The notes below the pieces were generated by a model that worked only from the letters and a program-made list of their open reading frames with translations, was not told where the DNA came from and ran no database searches. Positions 5,944-42,400 of a DNA stretch of 64,000 nucleotides are shown piece after piece (positions within the stretch are counted from its first letter, which is position 1; each line of letters starts with the position of its first letter). The position numbers and the translations under genes were made by a program. The stretch is from positions 62,001 to 126,000 of the IMG/VR virus record IMGVR_UViG_3300032931_001151; one strand, written 5' to 3'.

Positions 5944-5951
5944 TATATAAT
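5924..5951 (+). promoter_or_regulatory. sigma70-type promoter for rIIB overlapping the rIIA 3' end
   Basis: TTGACA 5924-5929, 16-nt spacer, TATAAT 5946-5951. Confidence 0.75.
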
Positions 5952-5977
5952 AAACAAATAACTTTTAGGAGAACACC

Positions 5978-13067: not shown

Positions 13068-13821
13068 GCTAATAGTACCAAACTTATCCAAATTAATACT
13101 TGATAATGATGAATTATCAAGTATTAATAAGTTTGAATCGGTTAATGTATCATTAGTTGCTCAAAATGGACTTGATATAGTTGAATCTATTAGAAATACA
13201 AATTTAATAACCGAAGAAGATGCGAAAAACATTAAGAATGCTCACGATTTCTTATTATCATCTTATACGGACGTTATTATCTATAACACAAGAATAGCAA
13301 AAGTAACTTCTATATTGTCTGATGGAAAATTCCCAACTAACGATTCTAAATTCTGGCAATGTAAAATGCAAGCGGAAGTTCATTTTAACGAATTTATACG
13401 AGCACTATATAAGTTAGATAGAGTAAAAATTGATATTGAAGAAATACAATATCAAATATTATGTCTTGATAATATGCTTAACAATGAAAATTCGGAAACT
13501 TCACAAATGGATAAAATAAAATTATCATTTGATAAGAGGCGGTTGGTTAATAAATTAAATCAATATATTCATGAAATGAAGTTACTTGAAAAAGATATTA
13601 AACAAAGACTCCGTGAAATAAACGATTGGTCAGAAATAGCGGAAGGATTTAAGAGTGCATGTGTGCATAGTACTTCCAATTATGAAGAACATACTATTAA
13701 TAGTCACATATTAGCATTACAAAATTATGTAAATAACGCTAAAACTCCCGAAGAAAAGAAGAACTTTGTTGACCAACTTAATACATTCTTAAGATTACTA
13801 GGAAAGCCGCCGATTAAATAA
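13039..13821 (+). CDS. conserved phage coiled-coil protein (FPT.DSKFWQC motif)
   Basis: SILSDGKFPTNDSKFWQC ... RLREINDWS; function unknown. Confidence 0.7.
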   Translation: MEERLKSPSELIVPNLSKLILDNDELSSINKFESVNVSLVAQNGLDIVESIRNTNLITEEDAKNIKNAHDFLLSSYTDVIIYNTRIAKVTSILSDGKFPTNDSKFWQCKMQAEVHFNEFIRALYKLDRVKIDIEEIQYQILCLDNMLNNENSETSQMDKIKLSFDKRRLVNKLNQYIHEMKLLEKDIKQRLREINDWSEIAEGFKSACVHSTSNYEEHTINSHILALQNYVNNAKTPEEKKNFVDQLNTFLRLLGKPPIK

Positions 13822-14536
13822 AAGACCCGTTCTCTAACGGTATAAATGGGTCACATGTAATTGGATACTCTATTGTTCCGGCGTTTCCAACCCAACTTAC
13901 AACTAATTGGCAACCATAATCTTGAACTAAAATTCCATTTCTTCCTATAAGAGATTTCATCAAGAAAACAACGTTGCTTTCCCCTGGAGTTCCGATAGTC
14001 CCATAATAAGTTCCTATTCCATACCCAGTGTTCTCAAATTGATATTTCCATGCTTGTAAGTATAGTGTACAATGACTATTAATAGTTTTATTATTTATTC
14101 CCCCATCATTCCAAATAAAATTTGAATCCAATCCACTAATAACAACCGTTCCATCGGTTGTTAAACTCTTAAATAGAGGTTTAGTTTTCATTGGTTCCGA
14201 ATAATCAACATTATATAAAATATTGTCACTTGGCCAATTTGAAGCATCACACGAAATAGCACTACATGGTCTAAAATCATACCATTTAGCATCTATTAAT
14301 ATATTAGAATCTACTGTATCAGCGGGATCCATTCTAATACAACTACCGGGTACTAGTGATGCTATTGATAGATAATATCCCGAAAAACAATTTTGATAGT
14401 ATTCATCGCTGTATGTTTTTTGAGAAAATGTCAAACTATTAGGAATTTTACCTAAATATACCATACCTTCATTTATACCCATATTATTGGCACTATATAT
14501 TTTATAAGGTAAATTTTGATTTATTAAAGTGGACAT
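13814..14536 (-). CDS. putative tail/fibre-associated structural protein
   Basis: In structural operon; C-terminal YYGTIGTPGESNVVFLMKSLIG shared with neighbour. Confidence 0.7.
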   Translation of the reverse strand: MSTLINQNLPYKIYSANNMGINEGMVYLGKIPNSLTFSQKTYSDEYYQNCFSGYYLSIASLVPGSCIRMDPADTVDSNILIDAKWYDFRPCSAISCDASNWPSDNILYNVDYSEPMKTKPLFKSLTTDGTVVISGLDSNFIWNDGGINNKTINSHCTLYLQAWKYQFENTGYGIGTYYGTIGTPGESNVVFLMKSLIGRNGILVQDYGCQLVVSWVGNAGTIEYPITCDPFIPLENGSFI

Positions 14537-14549: not shown

Positions 14550-15110
14550 TTAACAACAAGAAGTTGGATCCGCTACAATGGTAATAGTTCCTTGATCTTG
14601 CATAATAGAAATACAAGATGATTGTCCAACTACTTCCTTAAATTTCCATACTACATTGGAATTTCCCGGAGTTCCTATAGACCCATAATAAAATCCATTT
14701 ATACTACACACATTTTGAACATCGTATGTAAAAGTAGATAACCCTAGATTACATCCGTTATCCTCGATAGTTATAGACGGGTCACTATTAAGATTTCGCA
14801 AGACTAATCCTGTGTTGTCACCAGACTTCAATAAAGAAGTGGATTTATATTGTGGGCATTGTTGAGGTTCAACTTTACGAGTCTCTATGTATACATATGG
14901 GTCTGTTGTAGTTGGCCTAGTTACCTTAACATTCCGAGTACCAACAACACTTGCAAATAAATAAGTAGTTTTACATGCTGATACTTGATGTGGGTAGTAA
15001 TCAGTAGTATTAATGTTATTCGCTTTTGCCGAAATACCTAAAAAAACATTAACTCCCTTGGAGGATTCATTTTTTACGGTATAGGTAGTGAACGGAATGG
15101 AATTGGCCAT
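14550..15110 (-). CDS. putative tail/fibre-associated structural protein, paralog of 13814-14536
   Basis: YYGSIGTPGNSNVVWKFKEVVG. Confidence 0.7.
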   Translation of the reverse strand: MANSIPFTTYTVKNESSKGVNVFLGISAKANNINTTDYYPHQVSACKTTYLFASVVGTRNVKVTRPTTTDPYVYIETRKVEPQQCPQYKSTSLLKSGDNTGLVLRNLNSDPSITIEDNGCNLGLSTFTYDVQNVCSINGFYYGSIGTPGNSNVVWKFKEVVGQSSCISIMQDQGTITIVADPTSCC

Positions 15111-15113: not shown

Positions 15114-15521
15114 TTATACAACTCTCTTAATAACAACATATACGTTATCGGGAGAAAAAACTTTCATATATATGTAATTTTGGAAAGTTTGTATGGTATC
15201 AACCGTTATTTTGATGTAATTAGAGTCATATACTTCAACAATTACGCCCATTTGTAATGCTAAACTTAAATTAAAATTAGTAGGAATAGATACCGCATAT
15301 AACGCCTCTGTTGGTAGATACGTATAATTGGAAGTTTCAATTCCAACTACTATAGCGGGATCTAATACTAATTGACCCCCCGATATTACACCCATTAATT
15401 CTTTTAATTTAACACCAGGAACGAAATTGTCTCTAAATACCATATCACCGTCAAATGATTTGGTTATTATGACATTTGGATCATCTATTATAATACTAGT
15501 TGTTTTTTGTGGAGTAATCAT
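15114..15521 (-). CDS. putative fibre-associated structural protein
   Basis: DGDMVFRDNFVPGVKLKEL motif shared with the 411-aa and 3195-aa proteins. Confidence 0.7.
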   Translation of the reverse strand: MITPQKTTSIIIDDPNVIITKSFDGDMVFRDNFVPGVKLKELMGVISGGQLVLDPAIVVGIETSNYTYLPTEALYAVSIPTNFNLSLALQMGVIVEVYDSNYIKITVDTIQTFQNYIYMKVFSPDNVYVVIKRVV

Positions 15522-15525: not shown

Positions 15526-16761
15526 TTATCCTATTGTAGTAGCATTTAAATTAGTTATGGTCCAATCTATAGACCCAGTAAATGGAAGCTCTGATACTAT
15601 TGTAAATCCAACATTTGTTTTTGATGTCCACCAACAATTTATATTTTGATCACAACTTAAAGAAATTGCATAGTTACTTGATGTTAACGGATTTTCAAAA
15701 GTTACTTGAGCAGTCTTTTGTGCCTTAAATTGAATAGTTGCGTTTCTTTTGCCATATGTTGCTTGAGGACTTGAATCAAAAATCATAGCCTCCATAGTAG
15801 ATTGGGCCACATATTCCCCATCAACTTCCATTCCAAATATACGGCTCCAATGATCTGTTTGATATCCACTCACATGAAATTGAACTTTTATAACTCTTGA
15901 TCCCGTATCATATTGTCTTTTAACTACTTGTGACGATTCTACTGTATTACAAGAGGCATCCCCGGTAGTACAAGATATATCAACGCATCCACAAGACTCA
16001 CGCAATGTGCAATTTGCTGGTGTTTCTAACTTGCCTTGCCAAGATAATGTTACTGGATATGACACTTCACATGGATTACATTGTACAATCGCTACCCTTG
16101 ATAGTTCTATATTATTAGTATCATCCCAAAGTCTAAATACAATTGGCTCTGAGGAATTATAAGCAACAAATGCTAATTTAGCAATTATTTGTGAAATCTT
16201 ATATTCGTCTATTATAGGAGGAAGAACCATAGCCAATCCTGGAACGTCATACCATATCCATTCACCATTCAATTGATTAACGAATAAATCTCCAAAAATT
16301 ATTTCATCCGAATTACATCTTGAATACACATTAGATTGTATTTTATTAAAGAAAAATCTATCAATGCTCCATAGTCTTAAATTATCGCTCGTTGACTCGG
16401 GTTTTCTTGGTATGTTGGCACATGGACTATGATTGGTTTGAACATTGCCCATCCACCATAACGCACCCGTTAATAGGTTATTTTTCCAACTACTACTAGA
16501 ATCAACTATCTCACTCAACGTATACGGTCTACTTAACGTGCTATCATTAAATATTAACTCACCATTACTATTTGAATAAACCCCTTTTGTTCTAGTGTAT
16601 AGTTCTTTTAGAGTTATACCATTAGGTTTATCTAAAATATTGGTAACATAATCATCTTTGAATAGCAAATTACCACTAGTATCCATTGATAATGTTAACG
16701 CAGCAACATTATCCGATCTTGAGGATAAATTTACTCCGTATGTTCTATATGGTACATCCAT
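15526..16761 (-). CDS. tail-fibre-like protein, short paralog of the 3195-aa protein
   Basis: Shared N-terminal, middle and C-terminal motifs; C-terminal VTF..P....YAISL.......WW..K...GFTI......G.IDW domain. Confidence 0.75.
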   Translation of the reverse strand: MDVPYRTYGVNLSSRSDNVAALTLSMDTSGNLLFKDDYVTNILDKPNGITLKELYTRTKGVYSNSNGELIFNDSTLSRPYTLSEIVDSSSSWKNNLLTGALWWMGNVQTNHSPCANIPRKPESTSDNLRLWSIDRFFFNKIQSNVYSRCNSDEIIFGDLFVNQLNGEWIWYDVPGLAMVLPPIIDEYKISQIIAKLAFVAYNSSEPIVFRLWDDTNNIELSRVAIVQCNPCEVSYPVTLSWQGKLETPANCTLRESCGCVDISCTTGDASCNTVESSQVVKRQYDTGSRVIKVQFHVSGYQTDHWSRIFGMEVDGEYVAQSTMEAMIFDSSPQATYGKRNATIQFKAQKTAQVTFENPLTSSNYAISLSCDQNINCWWTSKTNVGFTIVSELPFTGSIDWTITNLNATTIG

Positions 16762-16772
16762 TTTTATTCCTT

Positions 16773-19700
16773 TTATAACTCGTAGAATTCGTCGTATGTT
16801 TGTTGTTCATCTAAATTGTCAATCTTATCACTTGGTATAGCATCTTCAAGATATATTGACCAATCTACATAACCAGAGAATTTCGCTTCCGCATTAATTG
16901 TAAATCCAGATGACGATTTATTTGACCACCAAACCTTTACGTTATCACTACACACCAAAGATATACTATATTTATCTTTATTTGGTAAGTAATCTGGTAT
17001 TGCATTTGTAAATTTCACCGCATAAGTAGTTATATTATTTTCAAACTTAGCACTACCTTGGCGCTCTACCGTGGTATTACTACCAACATCAAATATAGTA
17101 ACCCCAAGAGAACTTGTGGCACCCGCATTTTCACCACTTGAGAAGAATGGACTTAATGTTCTATACTTATAGTTATTATTAGAAGTATCCTCGGGTTGTA
17201 TTACTTTAGTATTCCATTTAAAAGTAACTCCAAATGTACTACTTTCCCACCAAGATTTACTCTTATGTAATTCACCATCGCCTGCTATAGCGTATCCACC
17301 TACTATAACCGAAGACTCAGTATTTCCTATAGCCGATTGGCCTATAAACCACTGATTTATTCTTTGGCAAGTAAATTCGGTATTTCCATCGAATAGATTT
17401 AATGCGGGAGCATCGCCACCCAAACCGACCCCATCTTGATACCTTCTCCATTGAGTAGGAACTATATCATTACTATTGATGCAATGTAATCCGATATACG
17501 TATTTGAATCCATATTACTATCAAGATTGTATTTGAAGAAATGCTTTTGCTCGGGATAACAAATGGAATCCTGTAAGCTTCTATATTCTTGAATAAAGCT
17601 CGTTGCCCATTCTACATATCCTTGATTGGTGTTTTGAAGTAATTGGATATTAAATGCAGAACATGGGTTAGTAGAGACATTACATGAATAACCATTAATT
17701 TGTTGTATTATAGGTCCACCAGAAACACTATTTAAGAATACGTTATTAACACTTGCTATCATATGATCCGAACAATCTATTCCATTTGACGAGTTTTCAT
17801 TTTCACTGTCTAGAATAGATTGTATTGCTTTTGCATTTCTATAATCGTCAAGGCAATAAATAAACTCATCGTAATTCACATAGACGGGTACATGAGAAGT
17901 TGAACCAGACAAATCATATGATGAGGTGGAAATAGAAGCAAAGTCATCAATAGCAACGGAAGCCGTCATTGATGCTAGTACAACGTGATCTCTATACTCA
18001 TTTACATGTAATCTTTGTCTTCTATAATTAGCCCAGACCTTTCCTTCCTCTAATGAGGTCCATAGAGTTACACCCCATCTTGGCTCTTTTCCAGTCGTTA
18101 GCCAAATATTAAACCCTTGTTCGCTATAAGGACCGGCGAAAGGGGATTCCATATATGGAGCAACCCATTCTTCGTGATTATGTTGCATCCATGGGGAGGC
18201 TGACGGACAATCGGTTACAAACGTTGAGTCACAAATGGAGCACGATATGCAATTTATATCAAATTGTGATACTAAATCAAGACCTTGAATAACATTTACA
18301 TTAGGACTAATTGATAGTGGTTCTAGTGGTAATGTGTATGCACCACTTATTTGAGTATTAAGAGAACTATCTATATATGTAGGTGAAGAATAATTAATTT
18401 TGTCTTTAGCCGACGAATTTATATTAACATTTGGAACGTTTTCTTGAATAATTTTTATATATAAATCGTAATATCTTTGCCCTTCTACCATATTAAGAGC
18501 CTCTTGTATTCCTTCACGGAAGCGAGTTCCTCTAATATCTTCAGTTAACAAATTATAATATTGAGATAGGCAAACTATACCATTTAAATTTGCTCCATCA
18601 ACTTCTTTCCAATTTGTTCTTGCTAGTGTGGTATTAAAGAATTCCGATTTCTTATCAGCACTAACTTTGATTATAGTATATAAATTCTTAAACTTATTTT
18701 GAGTGAAAGATACAAATTGCGAATCTATATATGGGTTTGTATTATTGATGTCCCCGATGGCTATCCAATAGTTTCCTTGACTATCAATCGCATCGGTATA
18801 ACCATTAGGTCCTAGTAATCCATCAAATCCCAATATATTCCAAGGCCATGCTTTATTTACTATAGCATCGTCGGGAGTTGTATCTAATGCCGAATTACTA
18901 AATTGCGAGTATTGACATGGGTTTCTTTGACCGCCATATAACAAACTTCCGCACATTGCAGTAGATTTGCCAAGTCCAAGACCACCTATTCCAAATGATT
19001 GTGGACCAGTTACATATGCACTTGAAACTATACCACCATCAACTTCCCCATTTGAATATCTATACGATCTAACTATTTCTGATCCCATGGAGTTATAATT
19101 CTGGTTGCACTCTGTCCATCCCAATATTGTGTAAGGAGCAACATATCCAGAAGGACTTGGTTGACCAAATGAGAAGAATCCTATAGAAGATAGAGGAATT
19201 GAAGATGCATTGACTAATCCGGAACTAATACACGGAATATTACCATTTATTATTTTAGAGGTGGAAACTAACAATTGACATACATTACTACTATATTGAT
19301 ATGAAGCGGAAGCGATATCAAATGATAAGCATTGCCCATTTACTCCTGGGTAATAACAACAAGCCGATGGGGCGGATGATACACTATGGCATATTGGAGT
19401 TAATGGCGGGAATCCGTCTATTATGCAATATCCACTACCAATTAAACTACTATTGGTAGTTGACATTCCGCTAATCGAACCTTGTAGTATTGAACTAATA
19501 GCAAAAGGCGAACTTTGTATAAAGAAGTTATCATTATTAAATGATAATCCAGTATTACCTATTGGAGCACTATAAATCCAAGTATCTTCATCAGATTCTA
19601 TAGTACAGAAATATCCTTTTCCATCTTGGATGTTATTTTTGTAATAACCTCCACTTAACATTTCACATATAGTTCCACGATTATAAGGATATAAATCAAT

Positions 19701-22700
19701 TGAACAACCCGAAGTTCCTTCTAATGAAGTTCTTCTCCAATTAATTGCATGAATACTATTTAACTCTTCGTTTTCCACCCACGTTTGAGTTGGGCCACTC
19801 AAAGGTTTATTATTGTAATTTAATAAATCAATCTTTCTTGGTTTTAATGCTGTACCGAATATATTATAATCAAATCCTTCTTTAGATCCAACAATTTCAG
19901 GACCCGCAACTTCATCATAAGTAATCTTATAATTTACAACTATATTTCCGTGCTTATCCTGACATGTTATTCTATAAGTCTCTCTATCATAAGTAGTTGG
20001 ATATAGAGAATTTATAGTTGATGGTGAAAGTTTTCTATGTAATGGGTCGGTGTTAGATGTTTGATCAAAGCAGAAAGTTGGGGTGATTTGGTCAATAGAA
20101 ATTACTTCTGCCGTCCAAATATTACCATTGACATCCCAATACCAAGTGGACGCTCCCAACGTTGGCTTATTAGATGCTTTTCCTGCTAATAAGTCGCACC
20201 AAGGCCACAAAGAAGCTCTATCACGAATTGAACTACTATTAGAAGATGGAATTATACTAAATTGTGATTGATGTGTTGTACCTCTTGGTAAGAAATATGG
20301 ACCGCCACTAGTTGGCCCATTAAAACTATCGTAAGTCATAGGATAGTAATGTGAAGAATATTTTTCTGGCAATGTATTATCAACCGATGTATTTAACCAT
20401 TCTCCGAGAGAAGAGAAATTACAAGAGGCGGAAGTTGTATTTGTTCCACTATTATAATAATTAGCAACTCTTGACGCCGAAGATATGTCAGCTTGAACTT
20501 TTGACATAGTAATGATAGCGTTAAGTATTGAAGATCCGTCTATTGAGCCATCCCATGATGTACTAAATTCTGGATATTCTATTTCTCCAACCGATAGCGA
20601 GCCATATTGGAAAATATTAGATTCGCTTAAAGGTATAAAATTCCCCGACCCATCATTATTTGTAATATACGGGGAAGAATCGTTGAAATTTAAAGTATCA
20701 AGAATGACATCGGTATGTGGGAACTTCCATCTCTCAACAAATGTATTTCTCTTGCTTCCATAGAAGAATTGATCTAATCCTACACCATCTCTTGAAATAT
20801 AGAACGAATAAGTGAATTTAGATGGTTTTATATAATCTTCTGGTAAACCAAAACTTAAAATATCGTAGAAATCTCTTAAGTTATTTAATCTATTAATATC
20901 ATTCGTTTGGGGTAAAGAGAAATTCCAATATGATGTTATGTCTTTAATTCCATATGAGCAAGTATTTGAGCCGCAGCCAGATATAGCAAACTCATTGGAA
21001 TAATATCCAGTTTCTCTTTGTAGATATGTCGCATCTTTTGCATGGACCCAATAGAATCCAGTACCGGATCCTGGAATTGTTATGACGTGACAACCCGAAG
21101 TCCACCAAGTTAAGCAACTATTTTCACACGATTCGCTATATGTTAATACTTGGAATCCTGAAGGTTTAGCACAACCATATAAGGCGTCTATTCTATCATC
21201 GAACCATCCAGTATGATAGAATACTCTCACGTCACCGGATGCACCAGATACGTTTGAAGTAAAACAATCACATTCATTTATATATAATCCACAAGGATTT
21301 AAATAAACACAACCACTTGTGCTAACACACCCATATTGAATTCCATCAGCACTAATGCAAATAGAAGTAGGAATAGATATTTCCTTATTGGATAATATGT
21401 TTCCCATATATCCCGAAGACCCAGTAATATTAGTGGTAGTGCAAATTATATCCGTTGGAATTGGTTGGAAACGAATAGCCAATCCGGGATGAATTATTCC
21501 AGTTTGATTATATGAAACTTCAACACCTTTAGTTCCATTACTATTTTGAATTCCGACTGTTGCATCACTAGGATCGTCAACTCTTTGATATAACAATGTA
21601 ATAGTTCCATCTCTATGAAGTTGAATTTGTGCGGTTAATAATAATGATCCGGTATTATCTCGATATAAAGTAGCCTTATTATATTGTATTACTATAGTAT
21701 CAGAGTCAATTTGTTTATAATATACCGCCGATGAACCCAATTGAAAGTTAAGATCGTCCCATAGTAAAGCAATAATATTTAGAACAACTGACGGCGATGG
21801 CAAATGGGTAGCACTAGGACTAGTACTTGTAGAACTATCCGTAAAACTAATAAATCCATTAGAACAAATATAAGCCGAATTAAAAACATTTCCATAGAAT
21901 GGAAAGTTTATTCCCAATGGTATTGATGTTGTAGAATCGTCGGCACCGGTTGATATAATCTTCGATCCGGTTCCACTAATATCTATCCATTCATAAGTTG
22001 GACCGTTTAATTGGTCACTAGTCATTACGTTGTATGGACTTTCAAATAGATAGTCGCAATTACCATTACAACAAGAAGAAACCGGTATTGATGGTATAAA
22101 CCAAACTTGATTGAAATAATCAATTGGAGTAAAGCATTTACTATTATACCCAACTAGATCGGCAGTAGGATTAACCGTATATGTAGGATATGCTGAACTA
22201 ATAGAGTTAGTTGAAAAGAAATTTGAATTATAATCTATTTGAATTGGCATAGATAAGCCAGATTCCATAGGCGAACCGGTTATAAACGATACGCCGGATA
22301 GAGGTGCTACATTTGATTGTATAGTTTCGTAAACATAGTCGAAATAAGTAGCCCAATTTGACGAAGGAGCAATTGTTAATGCCGTGTTTATGTCCGTAAC
22401 AATGCCCGTAACATTTATTTGATCAATACTAGTACCATTATCAATATATCCAACATAATGTTGAGTTGACGTAGTAGCGGGGCAAAGGATAACTCTTCTA
22501 AAATTATTTTTAGTATCCCAAGCATATAGATACGAATAAGAATTTCCATTTGCTAATTCTACATTTGATGACGGACCATTAATTAAATCGCAAAGACTAA
22601 TATATCCAAGTTTATATAAAGTTTCACGATCTGAAGCAACATTAGCATCAAGACAACCTATTTGTTTTCCAGATGGAGATAGTCTATTCGCTTTTGGTCT

Positions 22701-25700
22701 AAAATCTCCCATTGTCCATCTATAATTTCTTGATGTATTAGTTACACTAGCAAATCCTTGAGATTGCTCTTGCGTCGAATCCTGAAGTGTCAAGCAATCT
22801 TGAGCATCATACCAACAGATAGCAGAATGCAATCCAATATTTGTTTTAAATGATTGGTCTATCCAACTCTCATATGTTTGCCAAGTTCCGCTAATATGCT
22901 TAACATTGCAAGAATCATAATAATATTGGGGATTATCGTGTATATTTGTTGGGTGGAATAATTCTTCACCAGCGGTTGGTCTACTCCATAGCCACATTCC
23001 ACCATCGGTTGGATGGCCCGAATACTTATATTGACCAACAACATTAATATAGTTTTCTTTATTTGCAAAATATCCACTAATAGGGAATGCTGCTATTCCG
23101 TCTATAGAGTCATTTGGATTTGCCACATAATCTGGCTTATACGATTCAACAAATTGATTTGAATTTGGAGTTATATAATTTTGAGTAAAATATCCGACTT
23201 GATCTGTAAAATCTAGAGCAGACTCTCTTTCAGCATAAGGCAAGGTGGCATTTGAATTATTTAATTGTTCGTATTGTATTGCAGAACTTGTCCAACTTTC
23301 GCCGCCCGTAAAATATGTTATATTTAATAAATCGGGATATACGGAATTACTATTAGCATATGCTATTTGTGTTATATGTCCACTAGTTGCATTTACATAA
23401 GTAGACCAATCAACACCACTTAAATCCGGAATATTTCCACTATTTAAGTATTGAGTTGTATATAATATACCGCTAGTATTAGAATCTCTTAAATCTCCAA
23501 CTTTATAATATGTATTCTTAAAATAATCTTGATATAAAGTACTAAAAGAGGCGTATCTTTTCTCTCTATCTAATCCCGTTGTGCCTTTTTTATGCCAAGT
23601 TCCGCCAAATGATCCTATCATCTTCTCCCATTGTTCACAACCGGGATATGATACGGAAATATCTCCTGTTTCAACCGAACTATGGAGTCCACCGTAAATT
23701 ATTTGATGATTTACGTCACCGACGCCAGTATGAAAAGCAACACATTCTGGCATATTGTCTCTTCTAATCCAAGCCACGCCATTGTATTCATAAACTAAAT
23801 TTACTATAGAATTATTAAATTCGCTATATCTACTATCATCAAAGTACGAATAAAGTATATTATTTGTGGCATTTATAGAATTGGCCGGATTTAATGACAC
23901 CCCGGTCTTTCCGCCTGTAGCAACTCCAGAATTTTCATCTCCAAGATATAAAGTTCCCATAGTTTTTACGGGATAATTTCTTGTTGAATCCAAGAACCAA
24001 CCAACATTTGAATTAACCGAACTTTCAAGACTAATACCATTATTAGTTGGATTAGTAGATGATACTCCGTAAAAATTGACATTTGTTTGCTGCATATATT
24101 CAAATATATTAGTCAATTCAGAGTCTAGTATTCTATCTAATCCAAATGGATTAATGTCGCTTCCAGGAGTCCCTAATCCTGTAGTAGATGAATTTCCGCC
24201 GGCACCAATCCATCCATTAAATACCATTCCAATATTTGAGATAGCAACCGTAGTTATGGGTTTATCAGAAGAATTACTTGTGATGCCATTCATAGCATCT
24301 TTTATTTTTAATTGAGTTATAGCATCTATATGTAATAGTGTATTAGGGAATAAAGATGGATTTGAGTCTGCGGTGAATAGAACCGAAGGTAAAATTGGTG
24401 GAGTGTTACAAGTACCAGCAATATCACTTGTACCATTGAAGCTACCAGATGATGTTACAGTTGTAGTTTTTAAATATCCGGCAGGAGATACACGAGAATA
24501 GTTAGCATTATTTAAATGTGACCATATTCCATTTGACGTGATCCAAACTTGAGAAGTGGGGTAAAGAGTTTTAACTACTCCGTTATTCAAGAATTCGGCG
24601 TCATATACGCCAAATCCAATTATTTTTTCTTGATTAATTGTGCCGCCGCCGGCCAATCCCATCGCTTTAGGAGTTGGAATTGTAGTATTATTTTTCACAT
24701 ACCAATTATTTCCGTTCCACTCTTCTTCATAATATAAAGTAAACGCATTAGTTGTATTATAGTTATATCCACCGGGAGTTGCAATTTCATAGTATACGGT
24801 GCTATCTCCAATCAAATTCCAAGATTTTACGTTTAGAAAATTGTTTGGTATGTTAGTGGACGAGTTTCCGTTTAACGTGGAATTAAAAAATCCTCCACAA
24901 ACATACGCTTGCGAAGAGTCGCCGCCCGCATAATGGAACGCTCTTGGAACATTTAAATGTCCTATATTATATTCCTCTTCGCCCCATTCAGATATTAAAT
25001 CGCTAAATATATTTTTATAATCGGGAATATTTTGTATTCCAGTTGTCCATTGGATAGGATCTATAGTATTTACGAAATCTGATCCAGTAACATTAACTAT
25101 CAACGGATTAAGACGAATTTGTGGCATTATTTCGTGTACAATTCCTTGAACACTCTCATTAGCAACGCAATTGTCAACTTTTACAATTGTATTTGCACAC
25201 TTGTCTTGAATTATTTTCTCGCAGGGACTACAAGTTGCGGAAGCTGCATTACTTTCACTTGATGTGCCATATTGCATATTACCAGTATATGTTAAATCAA
25301 TTTGATTACCAACACATGATGCATTTCCATTTATAGCATTTTGATAATCAAATATTTGACCGGTGGTAGTATCCTTTACACGAACGCCGAAATCAACTAA
25401 CTTATTTTGAGAATTTAATTCGACTATACTACTTGAGTAATTCAAAATTAATTTTAATAGAATTCTCTTAGCATCTACTATTTTTCTTGTTCTAATAGAG
25501 AGAGAACTAGTCTCATCCACTACACCGAGGTCATTAGTAGATAATTGGTCTATATTAATCCATCCACCATTAATATAATCGGGAGAAACCAAAAATCCAT
25601 TATATGCGGGATATTGTTCGGGACATTGTGAATGTAATAAATCTATTTTATTTTTACGAACAATCTCATCATTTAGCATTTTGTCAAATGATACATATCC

Positions 25701-26360
25701 TAAAGCCGTTGCAACAGAAGAACAAATACTAGCATTAGCATTTGGATGCTCACCAAAATTTACTAATTTAAATTGAAAATCATATACTTTACCAAAATTC
25801 TTAATTTTATCCGAAGATTTTATAAACGCATTTTCCGAAGTTAATTGTATTAATGGTACGATACCCGAGGTTGAAACTGAACATCCCGAGTTATTAACCC
25901 CACCAACTTGAGAGTCTTTAAAAAATAGTTGATTTCCTACTTGATCGTAGATTATATTTGAATCTTGAGTAGATAAATCGGATATGGATATACTACTTAT
26001 AATATTTTTTTCGTCAAATTTTTCGGCTGAATTAGACCATTCATCCGAAAAAGTAATGGCTTCGGTAGAATCGGCATTGGTTTCTTTTCCTATCGTAGCA
26101 ACTAAAGTTTTAGCATTTATATTAGAAACCTCTATAGAAGATGCTAATGTATAATCAGAAGGAGTAATCGTAGGTTGTGTGTATACTATATCTTTATTAA
26201 TGTAATTTTTACTATTTACTAACGGAGAATTGCTATTTTGTATATCACTATTAGAAGAAGCAATAGAAACAGATTCAAGTGTTCCATTACTTGTTGAAGA
26301 ATTTGGATTTACACTTTTTAAGAACGCATTTGAAAATGGTGATGCTACTACGTTTGTCAT
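16773..26360 (-). CDS. giant (3195 aa) fibre/adhesin with Kelch-like blades and a NIDO-like domain
   Basis: Uninterrupted ORF; Kelch-like R....GG.....CGG / EEWNG..W / YEYNG..W repeats; WIDISGTG..DD...IPLG..FPFYG..SNGFISF..IALLWDDL domain. Confidence 0.8.
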   Translation of the reverse strand: MTNVVASPFSNAFLKSVNPNSSTSNGTLESVSIASSNSDIQNSNSPLVNSKNYINKDIVYTQPTITPSDYTLASSIEVSNINAKTLVATIGKETNADSTEAITFSDEWSNSAEKFDEKNIISSISISDLSTQDSNIIYDQVGNQLFFKDSQVGGVNNSGCSVSTSGIVPLIQLTSENAFIKSSDKIKNFGKVYDFQFKLVNFGEHPNANASICSSVATALGYVSFDKMLNDEIVRKNKIDLLHSQCPEQYPAYNGFLVSPDYINGGWINIDQLSTNDLGVVDETSSLSIRTRKIVDAKRILLKLILNYSSSIVELNSQNKLVDFGVRVKDTTTGQIFDYQNAINGNASCVGNQIDLTYTGNMQYGTSSESNAASATCSPCEKIIQDKCANTIVKVDNCVANESVQGIVHEIMPQIRLNPLIVNVTGSDFVNTIDPIQWTTGIQNIPDYKNIFSDLISEWGEEEYNIGHLNVPRAFHYAGGDSSQAYVCGGFFNSTLNGNSSTNIPNNFLNVKSWNLIGDSTVYYEIATPGGYNYNTTNAFTLYYEEEWNGNNWYVKNNTTIPTPKAMGLAGGGTINQEKIIGFGVYDAEFLNNGVVKTLYPTSQVWITSNGIWSHLNNANYSRVSPAGYLKTTTVTSSGSFNGTSDIAGTCNTPPILPSVLFTADSNPSLFPNTLLHIDAITQLKIKDAMNGITSNSSDKPITTVAISNIGMVFNGWIGAGGNSSTTGLGTPGSDINPFGLDRILDSELTNIFEYMQQTNVNFYGVSSTNPTNNGISLESSVNSNVGWFLDSTRNYPVKTMGTLYLGDENSGVATGGKTGVSLNPANSINATNNILYSYFDDSRYSEFNNSIVNLVYEYNGVAWIRRDNMPECVAFHTGVGDVNHQIIYGGLHSSVETGDISVSYPGCEQWEKMIGSFGGTWHKKGTTGLDREKRYASFSTLYQDYFKNTYYKVGDLRDSNTSGILYTTQYLNSGNIPDLSGVDWSTYVNATSGHITQIAYANSNSVYPDLLNITYFTGGESWTSSAIQYEQLNNSNATLPYAERESALDFTDQVGYFTQNYITPNSNQFVESYKPDYVANPNDSIDGIAAFPISGYFANKENYINVVGQYKYSGHPTDGGMWLWSRPTAGEELFHPTNIHDNPQYYYDSCNVKHISGTWQTYESWIDQSFKTNIGLHSAICWYDAQDCLTLQDSTQEQSQGFASVTNTSRNYRWTMGDFRPKANRLSPSGKQIGCLDANVASDRETLYKLGYISLCDLINGPSSNVELANGNSYSYLYAWDTKNNFRRVILCPATTSTQHYVGYIDNGTSIDQINVTGIVTDINTALTIAPSSNWATYFDYVYETIQSNVAPLSGVSFITGSPMESGLSMPIQIDYNSNFFSTNSISSAYPTYTVNPTADLVGYNSKCFTPIDYFNQVWFIPSIPVSSCCNGNCDYLFESPYNVMTSDQLNGPTYEWIDISGTGSKIISTGADDSTTSIPLGINFPFYGNVFNSAYICSNGFISFTDSSTSTSPSATHLPSPSVVLNIIALLWDDLNFQLGSSAVYYKQIDSDTIVIQYNKATLYRDNTGSLLLTAQIQLHRDGTITLLYQRVDDPSDATVGIQNSNGTKGVEVSYNQTGIIHPGLAIRFQPIPTDIICTTTNITGSSGYMGNILSNKEISIPTSICISADGIQYGCVSTSGCVYLNPCGLYINECDCFTSNVSGASGDVRVFYHTGWFDDRIDALYGCAKPSGFQVLTYSESCENSCLTWWTSGCHVITIPGSGTGFYWVHAKDATYLQRETGYYSNEFAISGCGSNTCSYGIKDITSYWNFSLPQTNDINRLNNLRDFYDILSFGLPEDYIKPSKFTYSFYISRDGVGLDQFFYGSKRNTFVERWKFPHTDVILDTLNFNDSSPYITNNDGSGNFIPLSESNIFQYGSLSVGEIEYPEFSTSWDGSIDGSSILNAIITMSKVQADISSASRVANYYNSGTNTTSASCNFSSLGEWLNTSVDNTLPEKYSSHYYPMTYDSFNGPTSGGPYFLPRGTTHQSQFSIIPSSNSSSIRDRASLWPWCDLLAGKASNKPTLGASTWYWDVNGNIWTAEVISIDQITPTFCFDQTSNTDPLHRKLSPSTINSLYPTTYDRETYRITCQDKHGNIVVNYKITYDEVAGPEIVGSKEGFDYNIFGTALKPRKIDLLNYNNKPLSGPTQTWVENEELNSIHAINWRRTSLEGTSGCSIDLYPYNRGTICEMLSGGYYKNNIQDGKGYFCTIESDEDTWIYSAPIGNTGLSFNNDNFFIQSSPFAISSILQGSISGMSTTNSSLIGSGYCIIDGFPPLTPICHSVSSAPSACCYYPGVNGQCLSFDIASASYQYSSNVCQLLVSTSKIINGNIPCISSGLVNASSIPLSSIGFFSFGQPSPSGYVAPYTILGWTECNQNYNSMGSEIVRSYRYSNGEVDGGIVSSAYVTGPQSFGIGGLGLGKSTAMCGSLLYGGQRNPCQYSQFSNSALDTTPDDAIVNKAWPWNILGFDGLLGPNGYTDAIDSQGNYWIAIGDINNTNPYIDSQFVSFTQNKFKNLYTIIKVSADKKSEFFNTTLARTNWKEVDGANLNGIVCLSQYYNLLTEDIRGTRFREGIQEALNMVEGQRYYDLYIKIIQENVPNVNINSSAKDKINYSSPTYIDSSLNTQISGAYTLPLEPLSISPNVNVIQGLDLVSQFDINCISCSICDSTFVTDCPSASPWMQHNHEEWVAPYMESPFAGPYSEQGFNIWLTTGKEPRWGVTLWTSLEEGKVWANYRRQRLHVNEYRDHVVLASMTASVAIDDFASISTSSYDLSGSTSHVPVYVNYDEFIYCLDDYRNAKAIQSILDSENENSSNGIDCSDHMIASVNNVFLNSVSGGPIIQQINGYSCNVSTNPCSAFNIQLLQNTNQGYVEWATSFIQEYRSLQDSICYPEQKHFFKYNLDSNMDSNTYIGLHCINSNDIVPTQWRRYQDGVGLGGDAPALNLFDGNTEFTCQRINQWFIGQSAIGNTESSVIVGGYAIAGDGELHKSKSWWESSTFGVTFKWNTKVIQPEDTSNNNYKYRTLSPFFSSGENAGATSSLGVTIFDVGSNTTVERQGSAKFENNITTYAVKFTNAIPDYLPNKDKYSISLVCSDNVKVWWSNKSSSGFTINAEAKFSGYVDWSIYLEDAIPSDKIDNLDEQQTYDEFYEL

Positions 26361-27814: not shown

Positions 27815-28648
27815 TTATATGAGATTCCACCAATCGACTCCGGTTTTTACTATAAAGTAATCAATATAGCAAGAGGCAGGATAACTAGTACCTATTTTAA
27901 CACAATTTGTACCTTTTTCTATATAATATGTATTTATATTTTCATTTGAAGAAATTACGACAGAATAATTATATTCTATATTTCCATTGCCATCTTTGAT
28001 AATATTTCCCTTGGAATCGGTTAATGGTTGGAATGCTGGAAGTGTTTGAATTCCATCATAGGTGCTATTGGGTTGAACGATATACTCATTTAAATACCAA
28101 CTACTACTTCCAAGTCCATTATAATGACTAGTATTTGATATATCTAACGTTTCTATTAATTTTCCGTTAGTATCATACATATTGGAAGCATTATTTGTTA
28201 TACTTCTTGTTCCTGCGAATATATTCCCAGATTTATTGAATCCGGTACTTGTTAATAATGTCTTATGGATAGCAAACCAAGTAATTTCGCTACCAAGAGA
28301 ATAACTACTATTAACTACTACTCTATTAGCATACTTTGTTGACCAAAATAATGTAGAATTGTCATTACTTCTAAAAAAGACATAATAATTTGTATCGGGG
28401 AATGATGTATCAAATCTAATTGTTGTGCTCTTTTTAGTTGATGCGATTTTTAGTACACCCGATTTGGTATATTTACTATCCACCGTTGTAGTTAATATCC
28501 AGTTAAATATATTTTCTGACCCATTCCAAGCACTATTAACGGTAAATGTACCATTGACATTTCTTTCGTACCAAGTATTAGCATTAAATCCGGCTTGGGT
28601 TAATACCCCACCCATTATTTTACTATTATCTATAATTTTAGAAGCCAT
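27815..28648 (-). CDS. structural protein built from about three copies of the shared beta-sandwich module
   Basis: TIRFDTSFPDTNYYVFF...WSTK...ITWFAI plus two diverged copies. Confidence 0.7.
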   Translation of the reverse strand: MASKIIDNSKIMGGVLTQAGFNANTWYERNVNGTFTVNSAWNGSENIFNWILTTTVDSKYTKSGVLKIASTKKSTTIRFDTSFPDTNYYVFFRSNDNSTLFWSTKYANRVVVNSSYSLGSEITWFAIHKTLLTSTGFNKSGNIFAGTRSITNNASNMYDTNGKLIETLDISNTSHYNGLGSSSWYLNEYIVQPNSTYDGIQTLPAFQPLTDSKGNIIKDGNGNIEYNYSVVISSNENINTYYIEKGTNCVKIGTSYPASCYIDYFIVKTGVDWWNLI

Positions 28649-39431: not shown

Positions 39432-42400
39432 TTATTGTTCTAGTTCTAGTATTATATTTCCAAGTTGAGGAAATTCGTATGGTCCTAATATGATTTTCAA
39501 ACTATAGTCCCAACTCGTTGTCCCGTTAGTATTTAGTGAACTAAATAGTGGTTGGAATATTCTAACAAGTGATGGATCTTTTGTAACTAATTCCATTAGT
39601 TTATTTCTTCTAGCTATATCGGTTTGTTCTTGTGTAGAATATATAGTATTTATAGATGCAACATAATCGGATGGAGTAAGCTTATTGTCGGGATTCTTAT
39701 TTAACATTACTTCAAACGAATCCACCGCATCAATAGCACTTATTAAATTTCCAATATATGAGTTCTCTATAGTTTCACCTAGATTGTGATTAGTATAGTT
39801 GAAATAATCTCCTATAGATTGTTTTATTTGTGATTCAATAATATCCGGATTTCCATAACTTTTTGCTTTATATCTAACAAGAACATCAATTGGAACCCAA
39901 GTTGCGGGAATTACGACGTGCTTTTTCCCAATAACTTTGACTGGATCACTATCAAGAGTATTAACTATTAAATCGTTTAAATTCTTACTGATAGTATTAG
40001 TGCCATCTTTGTTCAATATAATGACGAACACATAATTAAAGAAATAATTAGAATTTTCGGTTGAACTTATTAATCCTGCAGATTTAGCTTCTTCGTAATC
40101 CAAAACTTTTGCTCTTACTACGTAATCATTAAATACTTGTTCAACATAATTTAGCGTATCGTTAACCGAAACGTTTCTACCTTGACTCGTAAAGTAGTTT
40201 GTTGCATTTCTTCTTAACTCGTCAACCGTTTCTACATTATTTCCGCCAAATGCATTTTGATTTTGAATAATAGTCAAGTCGGTCGTTTGTAGTTTTGTTC
40301 CCTCAGAATCTACTAATCTTGTTTCAGGTGAAGACCCATTAAAATATTGTTGAGTCTTTAATCCCAACAATTCAACGAAATTATCTTCAAATTTAATATC
40401 TGTTTGGTCGTTTCCTAAAATATATTGCGAAACAATTATTTGATCGTTGAGAGTTGATTTATTGATATTGCCATCATTTCCAACAGAATTTAATCCAATA
40501 ATAAAAGTTTCTTTATCTAATGGCGAGGATCCATAGTTAACACCATCCCCAAAATCAATAGTAATTAATTGATCGGGGTTTGCTCTAACGAAAAATACTT
40601 GTTGCCCAACTGCTATATCCGAATTAAACCCAGTCCCCGAGCGTTTCCACTCATCCCATGTCCCAGAATCGTTTTTAACGAAAACTCTTAAGCTATTAAT
40701 AGATATATTTGAGTTATTAACTATATATCTAACATCATTGTCCGACAATCTTGATGGATCTATAGATATATTTAATCCATTATTGTTTGTATCTATGTTA
40801 GTACTTTTATCAATATATGTAAATGTAATTTGTCCTTGTAATAAATTATTAATGGCAAAAGTTTCGGGGACGTTCGTGAATCTTAAACCGGGTATAGTAG
40901 CAGCACTTGAGGTGCTTCCAGAAAAATCTATTTCGCCATGGCGTTGGAATGCGTATCCAGTACTACTATCAACATACCAATTTATAGTAACCACTTGATC
41001 TGTTATACCTGGCTCAATATTAATAGTAAACCCACTTGAACTCTTATTAGTATAATAGGTAACTAAATTAGCATCTGGAACTAGTTGTATAGCATAATTT
41101 GTATCGGTAATAGGAGTCTTGAGTTGTATGGCACCACTCGTTTCTCCTGGACGCAATACTATAGTTCCAATTTGTCTATATCCGCTTTCTGGTTCCGATG
41201 GAATGGTATCATTTTGGAAGAAATTGAAAATACTCCAACTTATCTTACCCGAAAAAGATTTTTCGGTTTTTACAGAGAACCCAGTTGTTCCAGCATTCTC
41301 ATACCATACTTGAATGTTATCATTAGGAGTTAATTGAACCATATAATTAGAAGTTAGACCATCTTGACTTATTCCTAATGGCATAGGTGTGTCAAATACT
41401 ACATCTTTTTGTTTAACATTCTCTTGAACTATTCTAGTAGCCGACCAACCAATAGTTCCAGCAAATTGTGTATTTGGTTCAACATATATAGTAAATCCGC
41501 TCTCATCCGAATTAGAATACCAAGTTCTAACATTATCTGAAGGAGTTAATTGAATGCTATATTCAACTTTAACTTCATTAGGATTTAACACGAAAGCACT
41601 ATTAAAATACACTTTTTGCGATGTTACTCCACTTCCAAATGTAACTTGGCCAGCTTTTTGTTCAGACGTTTGTATTGGCTCAGGTTCAACAACTTGGAAA
41701 TTTCCAAATTTTGTACTATTTGAAGTTGCTAATGCTGACGTTGAGGTTGTTGAATCTATGAAATTTGTAGTAATAGTAGCAATAGTAACTTGATTAGATA
41801 AAGGAGCATTAGCCGTTACTTCTAATCTAGCACCATAGTTGTTTATTGAATCGGTTTCATCTGCAATGACCAAATTAATATTATATGTAGGAACGTCGGA
41901 GCTAAAGAAGTTCTTGTCAAATTGTTGACTTGAAATAGTCCCGCTACTAAAAGTATAAAATACACCATTAATCAACACGGTTAATGGAGATTGAGATCCA
42001 TCTTTATTAACTACCAAATTTATTTGCTTTATAGCATTTGGAACATCTTGAAAATAAGAGAATTCAAGCTTAGTGCTATCTAAATTCTGTAGCCCTAAAA
42101 CTCCAGTAAAAAATCTATTAATTGTGCCATCTTCATAGAATTTTAATGAATAATTCATATTAGTATTGTCGGTTGGTTGAAGAATAATTGCTACTAATAT
42201 ATCATTTGCTTTTTCACCTAGGGTAGTCTTATCTTCCGCTATACTAATATATGGTGATGATGTATTCTTATCCCAATTGAATATTAAGTAATACGGAGTA
42301 TTAGGCACCATCGTCTTACTATACGCTATCGTTGGGATAGTTTGGATGAATGGTTGCCCAACCGAATTTGGATTACTTGGGTCAAATAATGGATAATTAG

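What the first reader, a model, noticed from the sequence alone, without database searches (positions are those of the whole stretch)
15526..26360. Nested fibre architecture: the 3195-aa protein looks like its 411-aa neighbour with about 2,600 aa inserted in one loop
Seen: the two adjacent proteins are collinear at both ends. N-side pairs are GNLLFKD..LKEL / GNQLFFKD..LIQL, NGEW..DVPGL / NGGWINIDQL, FRLWDDTN / VRVKDTTT, a Cys-rich loop, then KVQF / MPQI. C-side pair is SRIFG..GEYVAQSTMEAMIFD..QF..VTF..YAISLSCDQNINCWW..GFTI..FTGSIDW / RTLSP..GENAGATSSLGVTIFD..KF..VKF..YSISLVCSDNVKVWW..GFTI..FSGYVDW. In the small protein these halves are contiguous; in the giant they are separated by about 17190-25100. 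Inference: the two could co-assemble as a hetero-oligomeric fibre, with short subunits completing the scaffold and one subunit displaying a huge adhesin payload.
Basis: partly seen in the sequence, partly recalled or inferred. Interest (0 to 1): 0.8.

Follow-up and report, generated by a model that had tools for sequence, protein, structure and literature searches.

The report
Giant and short phage baseplate paralogues
Two neighbouring tail genes of an uncultured T4-like jumbo phage are ancient duplicates built from the same three modules, and the giant copy carries about 2,650 extra residues at one module junction; this is an extreme but recognisable case of modular phage adhesin evolution, not a new principle.

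Summary
The 411-aa protein (15526-16761, minus) and the 3195-aa protein (16773-26360, minus) are homologous at both ends, in the same order.

- **C side:** plain BLASTP finds it (34% identity, E 3e-11).
- **N side:** only profile-profile comparison finds it (E 5.8e-10, score 81.6 against at most 26.8 for shuffled controls).
- **Both ends joined:** with the giant's middle removed, one alignment covers small residues 4-409 (E 7e-33).

The short protein has three modules, which I call N1, N2 and C. In the giant the break falls at the N2|C junction (small residues ~300-306). In 46 other clusters this junction holds -23 to 85 extra residues; in giants it holds at least 900.

The C module is not special to this pair. 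It occurs three times in the gp6-like wedge protein, twice in a 277-aa neighbour, and at the C-terminus of many unrelated proteins.

The "insert" is a conserved multi-domain body. It probably starts with a Kelch-like propeller. Its centre is variable and carries a NIDO-like module found only in this genome.

The pair is adjacent in every relative examined and arose from an old duplication. Hetero-oligomeric co-assembly was not testable. Separate oligomers that share an anchor are more likely. No Pfam or PHROG family covers these proteins.

The parts
16773..26360 (-). Giant ORF, 3195 aa: N-extension, N1-like, N2-like, long body, C module
   Evidence: ORF list. It has 21 full-length homologues of 1837-3292 aa and further giant-type proteins of 1404-3473 aa. 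No Pfam or PHROG family hits it.
26139..26360 (-). Giant residues 1-74: variable Ser/Asn-rich N-terminal extension, absent from the small protein
   Evidence: Occupancy 0.55 and identity 0.22 among homologues. Length ranges from 11 to 93 aa. It lies outside the hhalign match.
25569..26138 (-). Giant residues ~75-264: N1-like module, homologous to small residues 9-165
   Evidence: hhalign of the family profiles with shuffle controls.
25110..25568 (-). Giant residues ~265-417: N2-like module with the VRVKDTTTG motif, a Cys-rich stretch and the HEIMPQIRL strand
   Evidence: hhalign. The R-x-x-D motif is invariant or nearly so across small, class ii/iii and giant proteins. The small-family N2 HMM hits giants P0091, P0094 and P0110 directly.
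17133..25109 (-). Giant residues ~418-3076: interposed body with no counterpart in the small protein
   Evidence: Chimeric-profile alignment and junction mapping. It is conserved in blocks across the family and has no internal repeats by BLASTP.
23661..24953 (-). Giant residues ~470-900: probable Kelch-like beta-propeller (a lead, not a membership)
   Evidence: Foldseek places the 1-1200 model on Kelch propellers, TMt up to 0.53, but that model is poor (mean pLDDT 42.6; locally 70-87 for residues 540-640). Independently, all ten best Atlas feature hits are Kelch families at score 0.92. Pfam finds no Kelch at E<=1.
20811..22823 (-). Giant residues ~1180-1850: expansion and contraction hot spot in the middle of the chain
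   Evidence: About 40 aa in the 2182-2210-aa forms and up to ~700 aa in others. Occupancy falls to 0.05-0.14 for residues 1451-1650.
21411..22031 (-). Giant residues 1444-1650: module found only in this genome, weakly NIDO-like
   Evidence: The closest relative, P0045, has about 40 aa here. Pfam NIDO PF06119 scores E 6.5e-4, 20.2 bits, below the 25-bit cut-off.
16851..17132 (-). Giant residues 3077-3170: C module
   Evidence: BLASTP E 3e-11, hhalign E 3e-22, module HMM E 5e-35.
15526..16761 (-). Small ORF, 411 aa: N1 (1-165; 16267-16761), N2 (166-300; 15862-16266, with invariant C257-G-C259, C264, C271), C (301-411; 15529-15861)
   Evidence: 43 homologues at 40-100% identity. Invariant residues. 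AF2 model: mean pLDDT 71.6, with residues 250-281 below 50 apart from 264-270. Sub-profile architecture analysis.
15114..15521 (-). 135-aa ORF 4 nt downstream: its first ~56 residues resemble the N-terminus of the small protein (G-D-M-V-F-R-D ... L-K-E-L)
   Evidence: hhalign of its orthologues against A1: probability 88.8%, E 2.5e-6, 30% identity over 56 columns. N1 HMM hit at E 0.002. Orthologues are present in L001, L002 and L003.
40995..41693 (-). Three tandem C modules inside the gp6/Baseplate_J-like wedge protein (ORF 39432-43046, residues 452-684)
   Evidence: BLASTP E 1e-4 to 7e-8. Module HMM i-E 4e-13 to 9e-18. Baseplate_J PF04865 scores above its cut-off and phrog_219 is a baseplate wedge family.
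27815..28648 (-). 277-aa ORF with two C modules (residues ~50-128 and 225-269)
   Evidence: Module HMM, full-sequence E 3.4e-13 and 2.4e-13.

Best explanation
Shown: the two genes are ancient tandem paralogues. They belong to an undescribed three-module family (N1-N2-C) of baseplate-peripheral or tail-fibre proteins in a deeply divergent T4-like jumbo-phage lineage. The short protein is the bare scaffold. The giant has the same N1 and N2 at its start and the same C module at its end. About 2,650 residues of mostly conserved, multi-domain body sit at the N2|C junction.

Inferred mechanism: N1, perhaps with N2, is the shared attachment or oligomerisation unit that docks each protein at the baseplate periphery, downstream of the gp6-like wedge. 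C is a generic beta-sandwich end-module of the kind that closes the Pam1 tailspike. The giant is the long host-adhesion protein. Its body probably begins with a Kelch-like propeller, and its central hot spot takes up lineage-specific binding modules, here a NIDO-like one. The 411-aa protein is the short version, loosely comparable to a short tail fibre or pin. Each protein most likely forms its own oligomer and uses equivalent or neighbouring docking sites, rather than mixing chains in one fibre.
For: - **Homology at both ends, with controls:**
- **Old duplication, no gene conversion:** C modules of the two proteins in the same genome are 31-38% identical, against 56-58% between orthologues. 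The small-family copies form their own clade with support 0.99.
- **Adjacency kept in all four loci read, including distant ones:**
- **Baseplate context:** gp5-like hub, gp25-like and gp6-like wedge proteins upstream on the same strand, and rIIA/rIIB elsewhere in the window.
- **Modularity:** the representatives search found 332 clusters. Architectures are N1-N2-C alone; N1-N2-C followed by a long extension; X-N2-C; N1-insert-N2-C (P0090, P0103); giants; and C alone or in tandem.
- **Junction mapping:** extra residues between N2 and C number 1-5 in most class i/ii proteins, 15-85 in class iii, and at least 1,724 in giants. The N2 HMM is complete on the N side.
- **C as an end-module:** at least 18 clusters with no N1 or N2 carry it at the C-terminus. 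It matches the Pam1 tailspike C-terminus by profile (E 0.014) and by fold (69 columns, rmsd 1.4 A).
- **Fibre-like fold class of the small protein:** TNF-like lectins in PDB (E 8e-5, TMt 0.58); tail-fibre proteins and C1q/collagen heads in BFVD.
- **Body content:**
Against: - No direct evidence for virion location, oligomeric state or receptor binding. No isolate, proteome or sequencing run was available.
- In every non-giant architecture N2 is directly followed by C, with one exception, P0153. That could mean N2 and C pack together, which would favour a chain that returns to its start.
- The 1-1200 model of the giant is poor (pLDDT 42.6), so the propeller is only a lead.
- Foldseek does not report which residues of the small protein matched the TNF-like fold.
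- The 135-aa neighbour shares the N-terminal motif. That fits a common docking site but also fits a mixed N-terminal bundle.
Confidence: 0.55

Rival explanations
1. True nesting. In the giant, N2 and C pack against each other just as in the short protein. The chain leaves this knob, runs out through the body and returns after ~2,650 residues. The middle of the sequence would then be the distal, host-facing tip.
For: - N2 is followed immediately by C in 46 non-giant clusters, and giants still keep both.
- The only strongly variable region, including the NIDO-like module found only in this genome, lies near the middle of the chain (residues 1180-1850 of 3195; about residue 990 of 2182 in the short giants).
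- The segment just after N2 (N-T-I-D-P-I-x-W-T-T-G) is invariant in the giants, as expected for a structured exit point.
- From my own knowledge, not retrieved here: the tip of T4 gp37 has a smaller out-and-back chain topology.
Against: - C folds and functions without N2 in many proteins, including tandem copies. Its presence at the giant's end therefore needs no N2 contact.
- Other family members carry inserts at the N1|N2 junction or after C, so inserts at module junctions are general.
- A single hot spot falling near the centre is weak statistics.
- The pTM of the small model is only 0.50, so even there the packing of N2 against C is uncertain.
Confidence: 0.25
2. One reading: the short and giant chains co-assemble into one hetero-oligomeric fibre through their shared N1-N2 and C modules. 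Short subunits complete the scaffold, and one subunit displays the large body.
For: - The gene pair is strictly adjacent and co-inherited, 11 nt apart on one strand.
- The fold class of the small protein resembles TNF/C1q-like heads. From my own knowledge, that superfamily includes hetero-trimers of paralogous chains, such as C1q.
- A third adjacent protein shares the N-terminal motif.
Against: - Nothing tested here speaks directly for it.
- The paralogues are only 17-21% identical across the N1-N2 region and 31-38% in C.
- The giant has an extra N-terminal extension.
- In another lineage the adjacent paralogue pair carries N2-C at opposite ends of the two proteins: 1258 aa with the unit at the N-terminus, 765 aa with it at the C-terminus. 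That does not fit parallel co-trimerisation.
- From my own knowledge, phage fibres are overwhelmingly homo-trimers.
Confidence: 0.12
3. The resemblance is trivial. The two proteins share only the widely reused C module, and the N-side motif pairs are chance.
For: BLASTP finds no significant N-side match. The C module does occur in many proteins.
Against: - Profile-profile E 5.8e-10 over 235 columns, far above the shuffled and reversed controls.
- Reciprocal HMM hits in collinear order.
- End-to-end chimeric alignment at E 7e-33.
- The R-x-x-D motif is shared across all classes.
Confidence: 0.03

Closest known systems
T4 peripheral baseplate paralogues gp9, gp10, gp11 and gp12
   Same: Neighbouring genes encode baseplate-periphery proteins derived from a common fold. 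They have acquired or lost subdomains and carry large insertions. The N-terminal 200 residues of gp10 resemble gp9 (PMC3004832). The gene context here matches: downstream of gp5-, gp25- and gp6-like genes.
   Different: No sequence or fold match to gp9-gp12 was found. The modules here are different ones. The size ratio of about 8:1, with about 2,650 aa at one junction, is far beyond the T4 examples.
C-terminal beta-sandwich domain of the cyanophage Pam1 tailspike (PDB 7EEA, residues ~590-663)
   Same: It is the best PDB match of the C-module profile (E 0.014) and an independent Foldseek match of the small-protein model (69 columns, rmsd 1.4 A, 20% identity). In both cases the domain ends a host-recognition protein.
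   Different: The sequence evidence is borderline. Pam1 is a podovirus tailspike with a different body. The module here also occurs internally and in tandem in a wedge protein.
TNF/C1q-like jelly-roll heads (BC2L-C N-terminal lectin 2WQ4, PLTL 9IB7; C1q-type heads of viral collagen-like proteins)
   Same: These are the top fold matches of the small-protein model (E 8e-5 to 4e-3, TMt 0.54-0.61; BFVD hits at rmsd 3.6-4.7 A over ~160 columns). They are compact beta-sandwich knobs, typically trimeric and often sugar-binding.
   Different: Identity is only 9-12%. The matched residues are not reported. No sequence-level match exists. Oligomeric state and ligand were not tested.
'Evolved' Dit and Tal proteins of siphophages, with carbohydrate-binding modules inserted into a baseplate scaffold
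   Same: A conserved baseplate scaffold protein exists in a plain version and in a version that carries inserted binding modules (PMC6669499, PMC7533335).
   Different: Those inserts are single CBMs of roughly 100-200 aa in a loop of a defined fold. Here the interposed part is ~2,650 aa of conserved multi-domain body at a module junction, and both versions are encoded side by side in one genome.
Multi-RBP phages whose tailspikes share an N-terminal anchor (for example the Ackermannviridae TSP sets)
   Same: Adjacent paralogous host-recognition proteins share N-terminal modules and differ in the rest (PMC8432352, listed; the comparison rests on my own knowledge).
   Different: Here the C-terminal module is shared as well, and no homology to those anchor domains was seen.

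Membership tests
N1-N2-C family (defined here, undescribed) | Collinear N1, N2 and C modules detectable by family profiles | tested here: met
   Small protein: all three modules at E 1e-54 to 3e-71. Giant: N side by hhalign at E 5.8e-10 and C side at E 3e-22; end-to-end alignment at E 7e-33.
T4 gp10/gp11/gp12 'flower motif' proteins | Sequence or fold similarity to gp10, gp11 or gp12 | tested here: not met
   No Pfam or PHROG hit. No T4 baseplate chain appears among the 50 best Foldseek PDB matches.
TNF/C1q-like jelly-roll superfamily | Ten-strand jelly-roll fold | tested here: inconclusive
   Foldseek E 8e-5, TMt 0.58, rmsd 4.3 A on a model with mean pLDDT 71.6. The aligned residues are not reported. 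No sequence support.
TNF/C1q-like jelly-roll superfamily | Trimeric assembly around a three-fold axis | not testable with these tools
   No multimer prediction was available and model coordinates could not be read.
Pam1-tailspike-type C-terminal domain (7EEA) | Fold and profile match to residues 590-663 | tested here: inconclusive
   The fold match is strong locally (69 columns, rmsd 1.4 A, probability 1.00). The profile E of 0.014 is borderline.
Pfam H_lectin (PF09458) and Gp53-like_C (PF21882) | Score above the Pfam gathering cut-off | tested here: not met
   The window's own C modules give no hit. Relatives give 17.5 bits (cut-off 24) for H_lectin and 19.5-24.3 bits (cut-off 24.9) for Gp53-like_C.
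Kelch beta-propeller (PF01344 clan) | Pfam Kelch repeats above cut-off | tested here: not met
   No family at E<=1 for residues 440-760 or 740-1180.
Kelch beta-propeller (PF01344 clan) | Six-bladed propeller fold | tested here: inconclusive
   Foldseek hits Kelch domains at TMt up to 0.53, but from a poor model. Atlas feature score is 0.92, with 145-152 shared features among the top Kelch hits, below the 170 typical of true members.
NIDO (PF06119) | Score above the gathering cut-off | tested here: not met
   20.2 bits against a 25-bit cut-off, E 6.5e-4, covering profile positions 1-60 of 186.
Domain-insertion ('nested') proteins | The host domain's fold is completed by segments on both sides of the insert | not testable with these tools
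   Model coordinates could not be read, and a joined N+C construct may not be submitted. Sequence evidence places the break between modules.
T4-like contractile-tail baseplate module (context) | gp5-like hub, gp25-like and gp6/Baseplate_J-like wedge genes in one operon-like block | tested here: met
   PF04865 at 28.7 bits, above its 21.1-bit cut-off. phrog_430, phrog_261 and phrog_219 at E 1e-32 to 1e-34.

The most novel reading that the evidence does not exclude
The giant is a genuinely nested protein. Its N2 and C modules form the same knob as in the 411-aa paralogue. The ~2,650-residue body loops out from that knob and back, so the variable centre of the sequence is the host-facing tip. The short paralogue, and perhaps the 135-aa protein with the same N-terminal motif, would then occupy the remaining positions of a mixed oligomer or the equivalent docking sites on the baseplate.
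Probability: 0.2. Interest if true: 0.65.

Novelty: new variant of a known kind. Interest (0 to 1): 0.4.

Why it matters
- **An undescribed module set.** The N1-N2-C set is widespread: 332 representative clusters at 50% identity. It covers the baseplate and fibre proteins of a large group of uncultured jumbo phages for which Pfam, PHROGs and 50,697 phage records give nothing.
- **A natural size series.** At one junction the interposed length runs from about 0 to about 2,950 residues. This shows how a very large host-adhesion protein can be built on a small scaffold.
- **Practical use.** The series marks which parts are anchor, body and variable centre. That helps annotate such phages and guess where host specificity lies.
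- **If the chain returns to its start.** It would be an unusually large case of domain insertion in a virion protein.

Tried and rejected
- **BLASTP of the N-terminal parts**: not significant, so the N-side claim rests on profiles only.
- **Pfam and PHROGs** on both proteins and their neighbours: nothing above cut-offs.
- **tblastn against 50,697 phage records** with the small protein, the giant, and the 1911-aa and 1674-aa neighbours: no match. Only the first ~110 residues of the gp6-like protein hit cyanophage and Sinorhizobium phage wedge genes.
- **PDB sequence searches** with the whole-protein and N2 profiles: nothing significant.
- **AF2 of giant residues 1-1200**: too poor (pLDDT 42.6) to compare its N-domain with the small model. 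I used its Foldseek result only as a lead.
- **Atlas search of residues 1850-2880**: weak crAss muzzle-protein hits at 0.69, disregarded.
- **Placing small residues 240-320 on either side of the insert**: only the H-x-I-x-x-Q strand could be placed, weakly, on the N side.
- **Internal repeats in the giant**: none.
- **Gene conversion between the pair**: rejected.
- **Sequencing runs for read-level checks of the private module**: none was listed.
- **The moraphage paper** (PMC12619734): I found no evidence that it describes this lineage and did not pursue it.

Full report
**Context**

The window has about 32% G+C. From about 13.8 to 46.6 kb it carries one minus-strand block of tightly packed genes. 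In order along that strand these are:

- a gp5-like hub (43491-45125);
- a gp25-like wedge protein (43059-43448);
- a 1204-aa gp6/Baseplate_J-like wedge protein (39432-43046);
- proteins of 1911, 1674, 277, 311 and 156 aa;
- the 3195-aa giant (16773-26360);
- the 411-aa protein (15526-16761);
- proteins of 135, 186 and 240 aa.

rIIA and rIIB lie at 3757-6958. This is therefore the baseplate and fibre module of a very divergent T4-like myophage. Relatives sit on contigs of 217-415 kb. Apart from the first ~110 residues of the gp6-like protein, none of the large proteins matches any of 50,697 deposited phage records.

**Checking the observation**

*C side.* BLASTP alone finds it: small 319-402 against giant 3081-3169, 34% identity, E 3e-11.

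*N side.* BLASTP does not find it (best E 0.31). I collected 43 homologues of the small protein (alignment A1) and 21 of the giant and compared profiles. Small 9-245 aligns with giant 75-362 at hhalign probability 96.6%, E 5.8e-10, score 81.6. The C side gives E 3e-22. Twenty column-shuffled versions of the giant N-terminal alignment scored at most 26.8 and the reversed one 17.1.

*Both ends joined.* With giant residues 426-3059 removed, a single alignment covers small 4-409 (396 columns, E 6.7e-33).

*Independent support.* An HMM of the giant N-region hits small-family members in collinear pieces (P0070, E 8.5e-10). The small-family N2 HMM hits other giants directly (P0091, P0094, P0110).

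**What the unit is**

I split the small profile into N1 (1-165), N2 (166-300) and C (301-411). I then scanned the 150 best of 332 clusters returned by an exhaustive profile search. The architectures are:

| Class | Architecture | Size | Examples or notes |
|---|---|---|---|
| i | N1-N2-C alone | ~380-450 aa | the small-protein family |
| ii | the whole unit at the N-terminus, then a long extension | 514-1752 aa | P0085, P0095 |
| iii | an N-terminal region of 400-750 aa, then N2-C at the C-terminal end | 754-1299 aa | in P0090 and P0103, N1 is separated from N2 by ~320-600 aa |
| iv | giant-type N-region at the start and C at the far end | 1404-3473 aa | |
| v | C alone or in tandem | varied | |

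The number of extra residues between N2 and C is 1-5 in most of classes i and ii, 15-85 in class iii, and at least 1,724 in giants detected with the small-family N2 profile. By the giant-type N profile it is about 900-2,950. In giants the N2 HMM is matched up to position 134-136 of 137 on the N side, and the C HMM starts at position 6-17 on the C side. The break therefore lies at the N2|C module boundary, equivalent to small residues ~300-306.

**The C module is widely reused**

A module HMM finds seven copies in four baseplate proteins of this window:

- three in tandem in the gp6-like protein (residues 452-684);
- two in the 277-aa protein;
- one each in the pair under study.

At least 18 clusters of proteins of 450-1612 aa carry C at their extreme C-terminus with no detectable N1, N2 or giant-type N-region, even with filters off and E up to 10.

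A 90-sequence profile of C (A3) has as its best PDB match the C-terminal residues 590-663 of the cyanophage Pam1 tailspike (E 0.014). Foldseek with the small-protein model independently hits the same chain over 69 columns at rmsd 1.4 A. Weak sub-threshold Pfam hits in relatives point to H_lectin and Gp53-like_C.

C is thus a free-standing beta-sandwich end or decoration module of host-recognition proteins. Sharing it says little by itself. The specific link between the two proteins is the collinear N1-N2 homology together with C.

**Fold of the small protein**

The AF2 model has mean pLDDT 71.6 and pTM 0.50. The Cys-rich stretch 250-281 is mostly disordered; it holds the invariant C257, C259, C264 and C271. 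Its best PDB matches are TNF-like lectins (PLTL, BC2L-C N-terminal domain; E 8e-5 to 4e-3, TMt 0.54-0.61). Its best viral matches are tail-fibre proteins and the C1q-type heads of collagen-like proteins. This fits a fibre knob. However, the tool does not report which residues matched, so I cannot say whether the jelly roll is N2, or N2's last strand plus C.

**What lies between the ends**

The interposed ~2,650 residues are not a loose cassette. The giants are collinear throughout. Blocks at 75-572, 741-1180, 1850-2300, 2450-2880 and 2895-3195 are as conserved as the ends.

The one strongly variable region is the centre, residues ~1180-1850. It is about 40 aa in the 2182-2210-aa forms and up to ~700 aa elsewhere. 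Residues 1444-1650 are found only in this genome and give a sub-threshold NIDO hit.

Two independent weak lines suggest a Kelch-like propeller at ~470-900, directly after N2:
- Foldseek on a poor model;
- protein-language-model features at score 0.92, with all ten best hits being Kelch.

Pfam does not confirm the propeller. There are no internal repeats.

**History and linkage**

In seven genomes the C modules of the two proteins are 31-38% identical to each other, while orthologues are 56-58% identical. The small-family copies form a clade with support 0.99. The duplication is therefore old, and the copies do not homogenise. The giant-then-small order is kept in all four loci read, including distant ones with 2182-3292-aa giants.

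Another lineage has a different adjacent pair: a 1258-aa class ii protein followed by a 765-aa class iii protein.

The 135-aa protein just downstream shares its first ~56 residues with the small protein (E 2.5e-6).

**Interpretation**

*Shown:*
- homology at both ends, in order;
- a break at one module junction;
- an old duplication with conserved linkage;
- a baseplate context.

*Inferred:*
- N1-N2 is the shared anchor or oligomerisation unit;
- the giant is the long adhesin and the 411-aa protein the short version;
- each forms its own oligomer.

Two more novel readings remain open. One is that the chain returns, so that N2 and C pack together and the variable centre is the distal tip. The other is that the two chains co-assemble. 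The near-universal adjacency of N2 and C, and the central position of the hot spot, speak for the first. The independence of C, and the presence of inserts at other junctions, speak against needing it. Nothing tested here bears directly on co-assembly.

**Comparison with known systems**

T4 gp9-gp12 are the closest in logic. They are neighbouring peripheral baseplate paralogues from a common fold, with subdomains gained and lost (PMC3004832). No membership could be shown here. 'Evolved' Dit and Tal proteins are the closest precedent for a plain and an expanded version of one baseplate scaffold (PMC6669499, PMC7533335).

**Verdict**

It is best filed as an extreme variant of modular fibre evolution in an undescribed protein family.

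Noticed in passing
window 39432-43046 (-), residues 452-684 = 40995-41693: The gp6/Baseplate_J-like wedge protein is about twice the length of T4 gp6. It carries three tandem copies of the same C module that ends the giant and the 411-aa protein. Homologues of 1209 aa show the same triplet (P0075, P0078).
   Followed up: partly
window 15114-15521 (-): The 135-aa protein 4 nt downstream of the small gene shares its first ~56 residues with the N-terminus of the small protein (hhalign E 2.5e-6). Three consecutive genes therefore begin with a related G-x-hydrophobic-x-F-x-D ... L-K-E-L element.
   Followed up: partly
window 21411-22031 (-), giant residues 1444-1650: A ~200-aa module found only in this genome sits in the centre of the giant. 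It gives a sub-threshold NIDO (nidogen-like) hit. The closest relative has about 40 aa at this position.
   Followed up: partly
window 15862-16266 (-), small residues 250-281: The invariant Cys cluster C-G-C-x4-C-x6-C in the small family lies in the only long low-confidence loop of the model. A Cys-rich stretch sits at the equivalent place in the giant. It could be a metal site or a disulphide knot; I did not test this.
   Followed up: no
window 13814-14536 (-) and 14550-15110 (-): The 240-aa and 186-aa proteins at the end of the module are paralogues (24% identity over ~208 aa, E 1e-9) with no family hit. They may be fibre accessory or tip proteins.
   Followed up: no
window 27815-28648 (-): The 277-aa protein between the 1674-aa and 311-aa genes contains two C modules (residues ~50-128 and 225-269).
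   Followed up: partly
window 49561-50283 (-) and 50280-50975 (-): Tandem paralogues 80% identical over 204 aa, much more alike than any other pair in the window. This points to a recent duplication or gene conversion.
   Followed up: no
window 57195-58109 (+) and 58067-59884 (+): A 304-aa protein is 41-44% identical to each half of the neighbouring 605-aa protein, which carries a family-25 glycosyltransferase domain (PF01755, E 2e-20). That makes three copies of one unit.
   Followed up: no
window 46894-48054 (+): An HNH/homing-endonuclease-like gene (phrog_559, E 4e-101) lies on the plus strand at the upstream edge of the minus-strand baseplate block.
   Followed up: no
L004 5426-11516 and L005 393-6483: In another phage lineage, an adjacent pair of 1258 aa (N1-N2-C at the N-terminus plus an extension) and 765 aa (N2-C at the C-terminal end) repeats the theme of neighbouring paralogues built from these modules.
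   Followed up: partly
window 28652-33676 (-) and 33687-39422 (-): The 1674-aa and 1911-aa proteins between the gp6-like gene and the pair have only a weak FG-GAP hit and a PKD hit. They match no deposited phage record and may be the gp7-like wedge components.
   Followed up: partly
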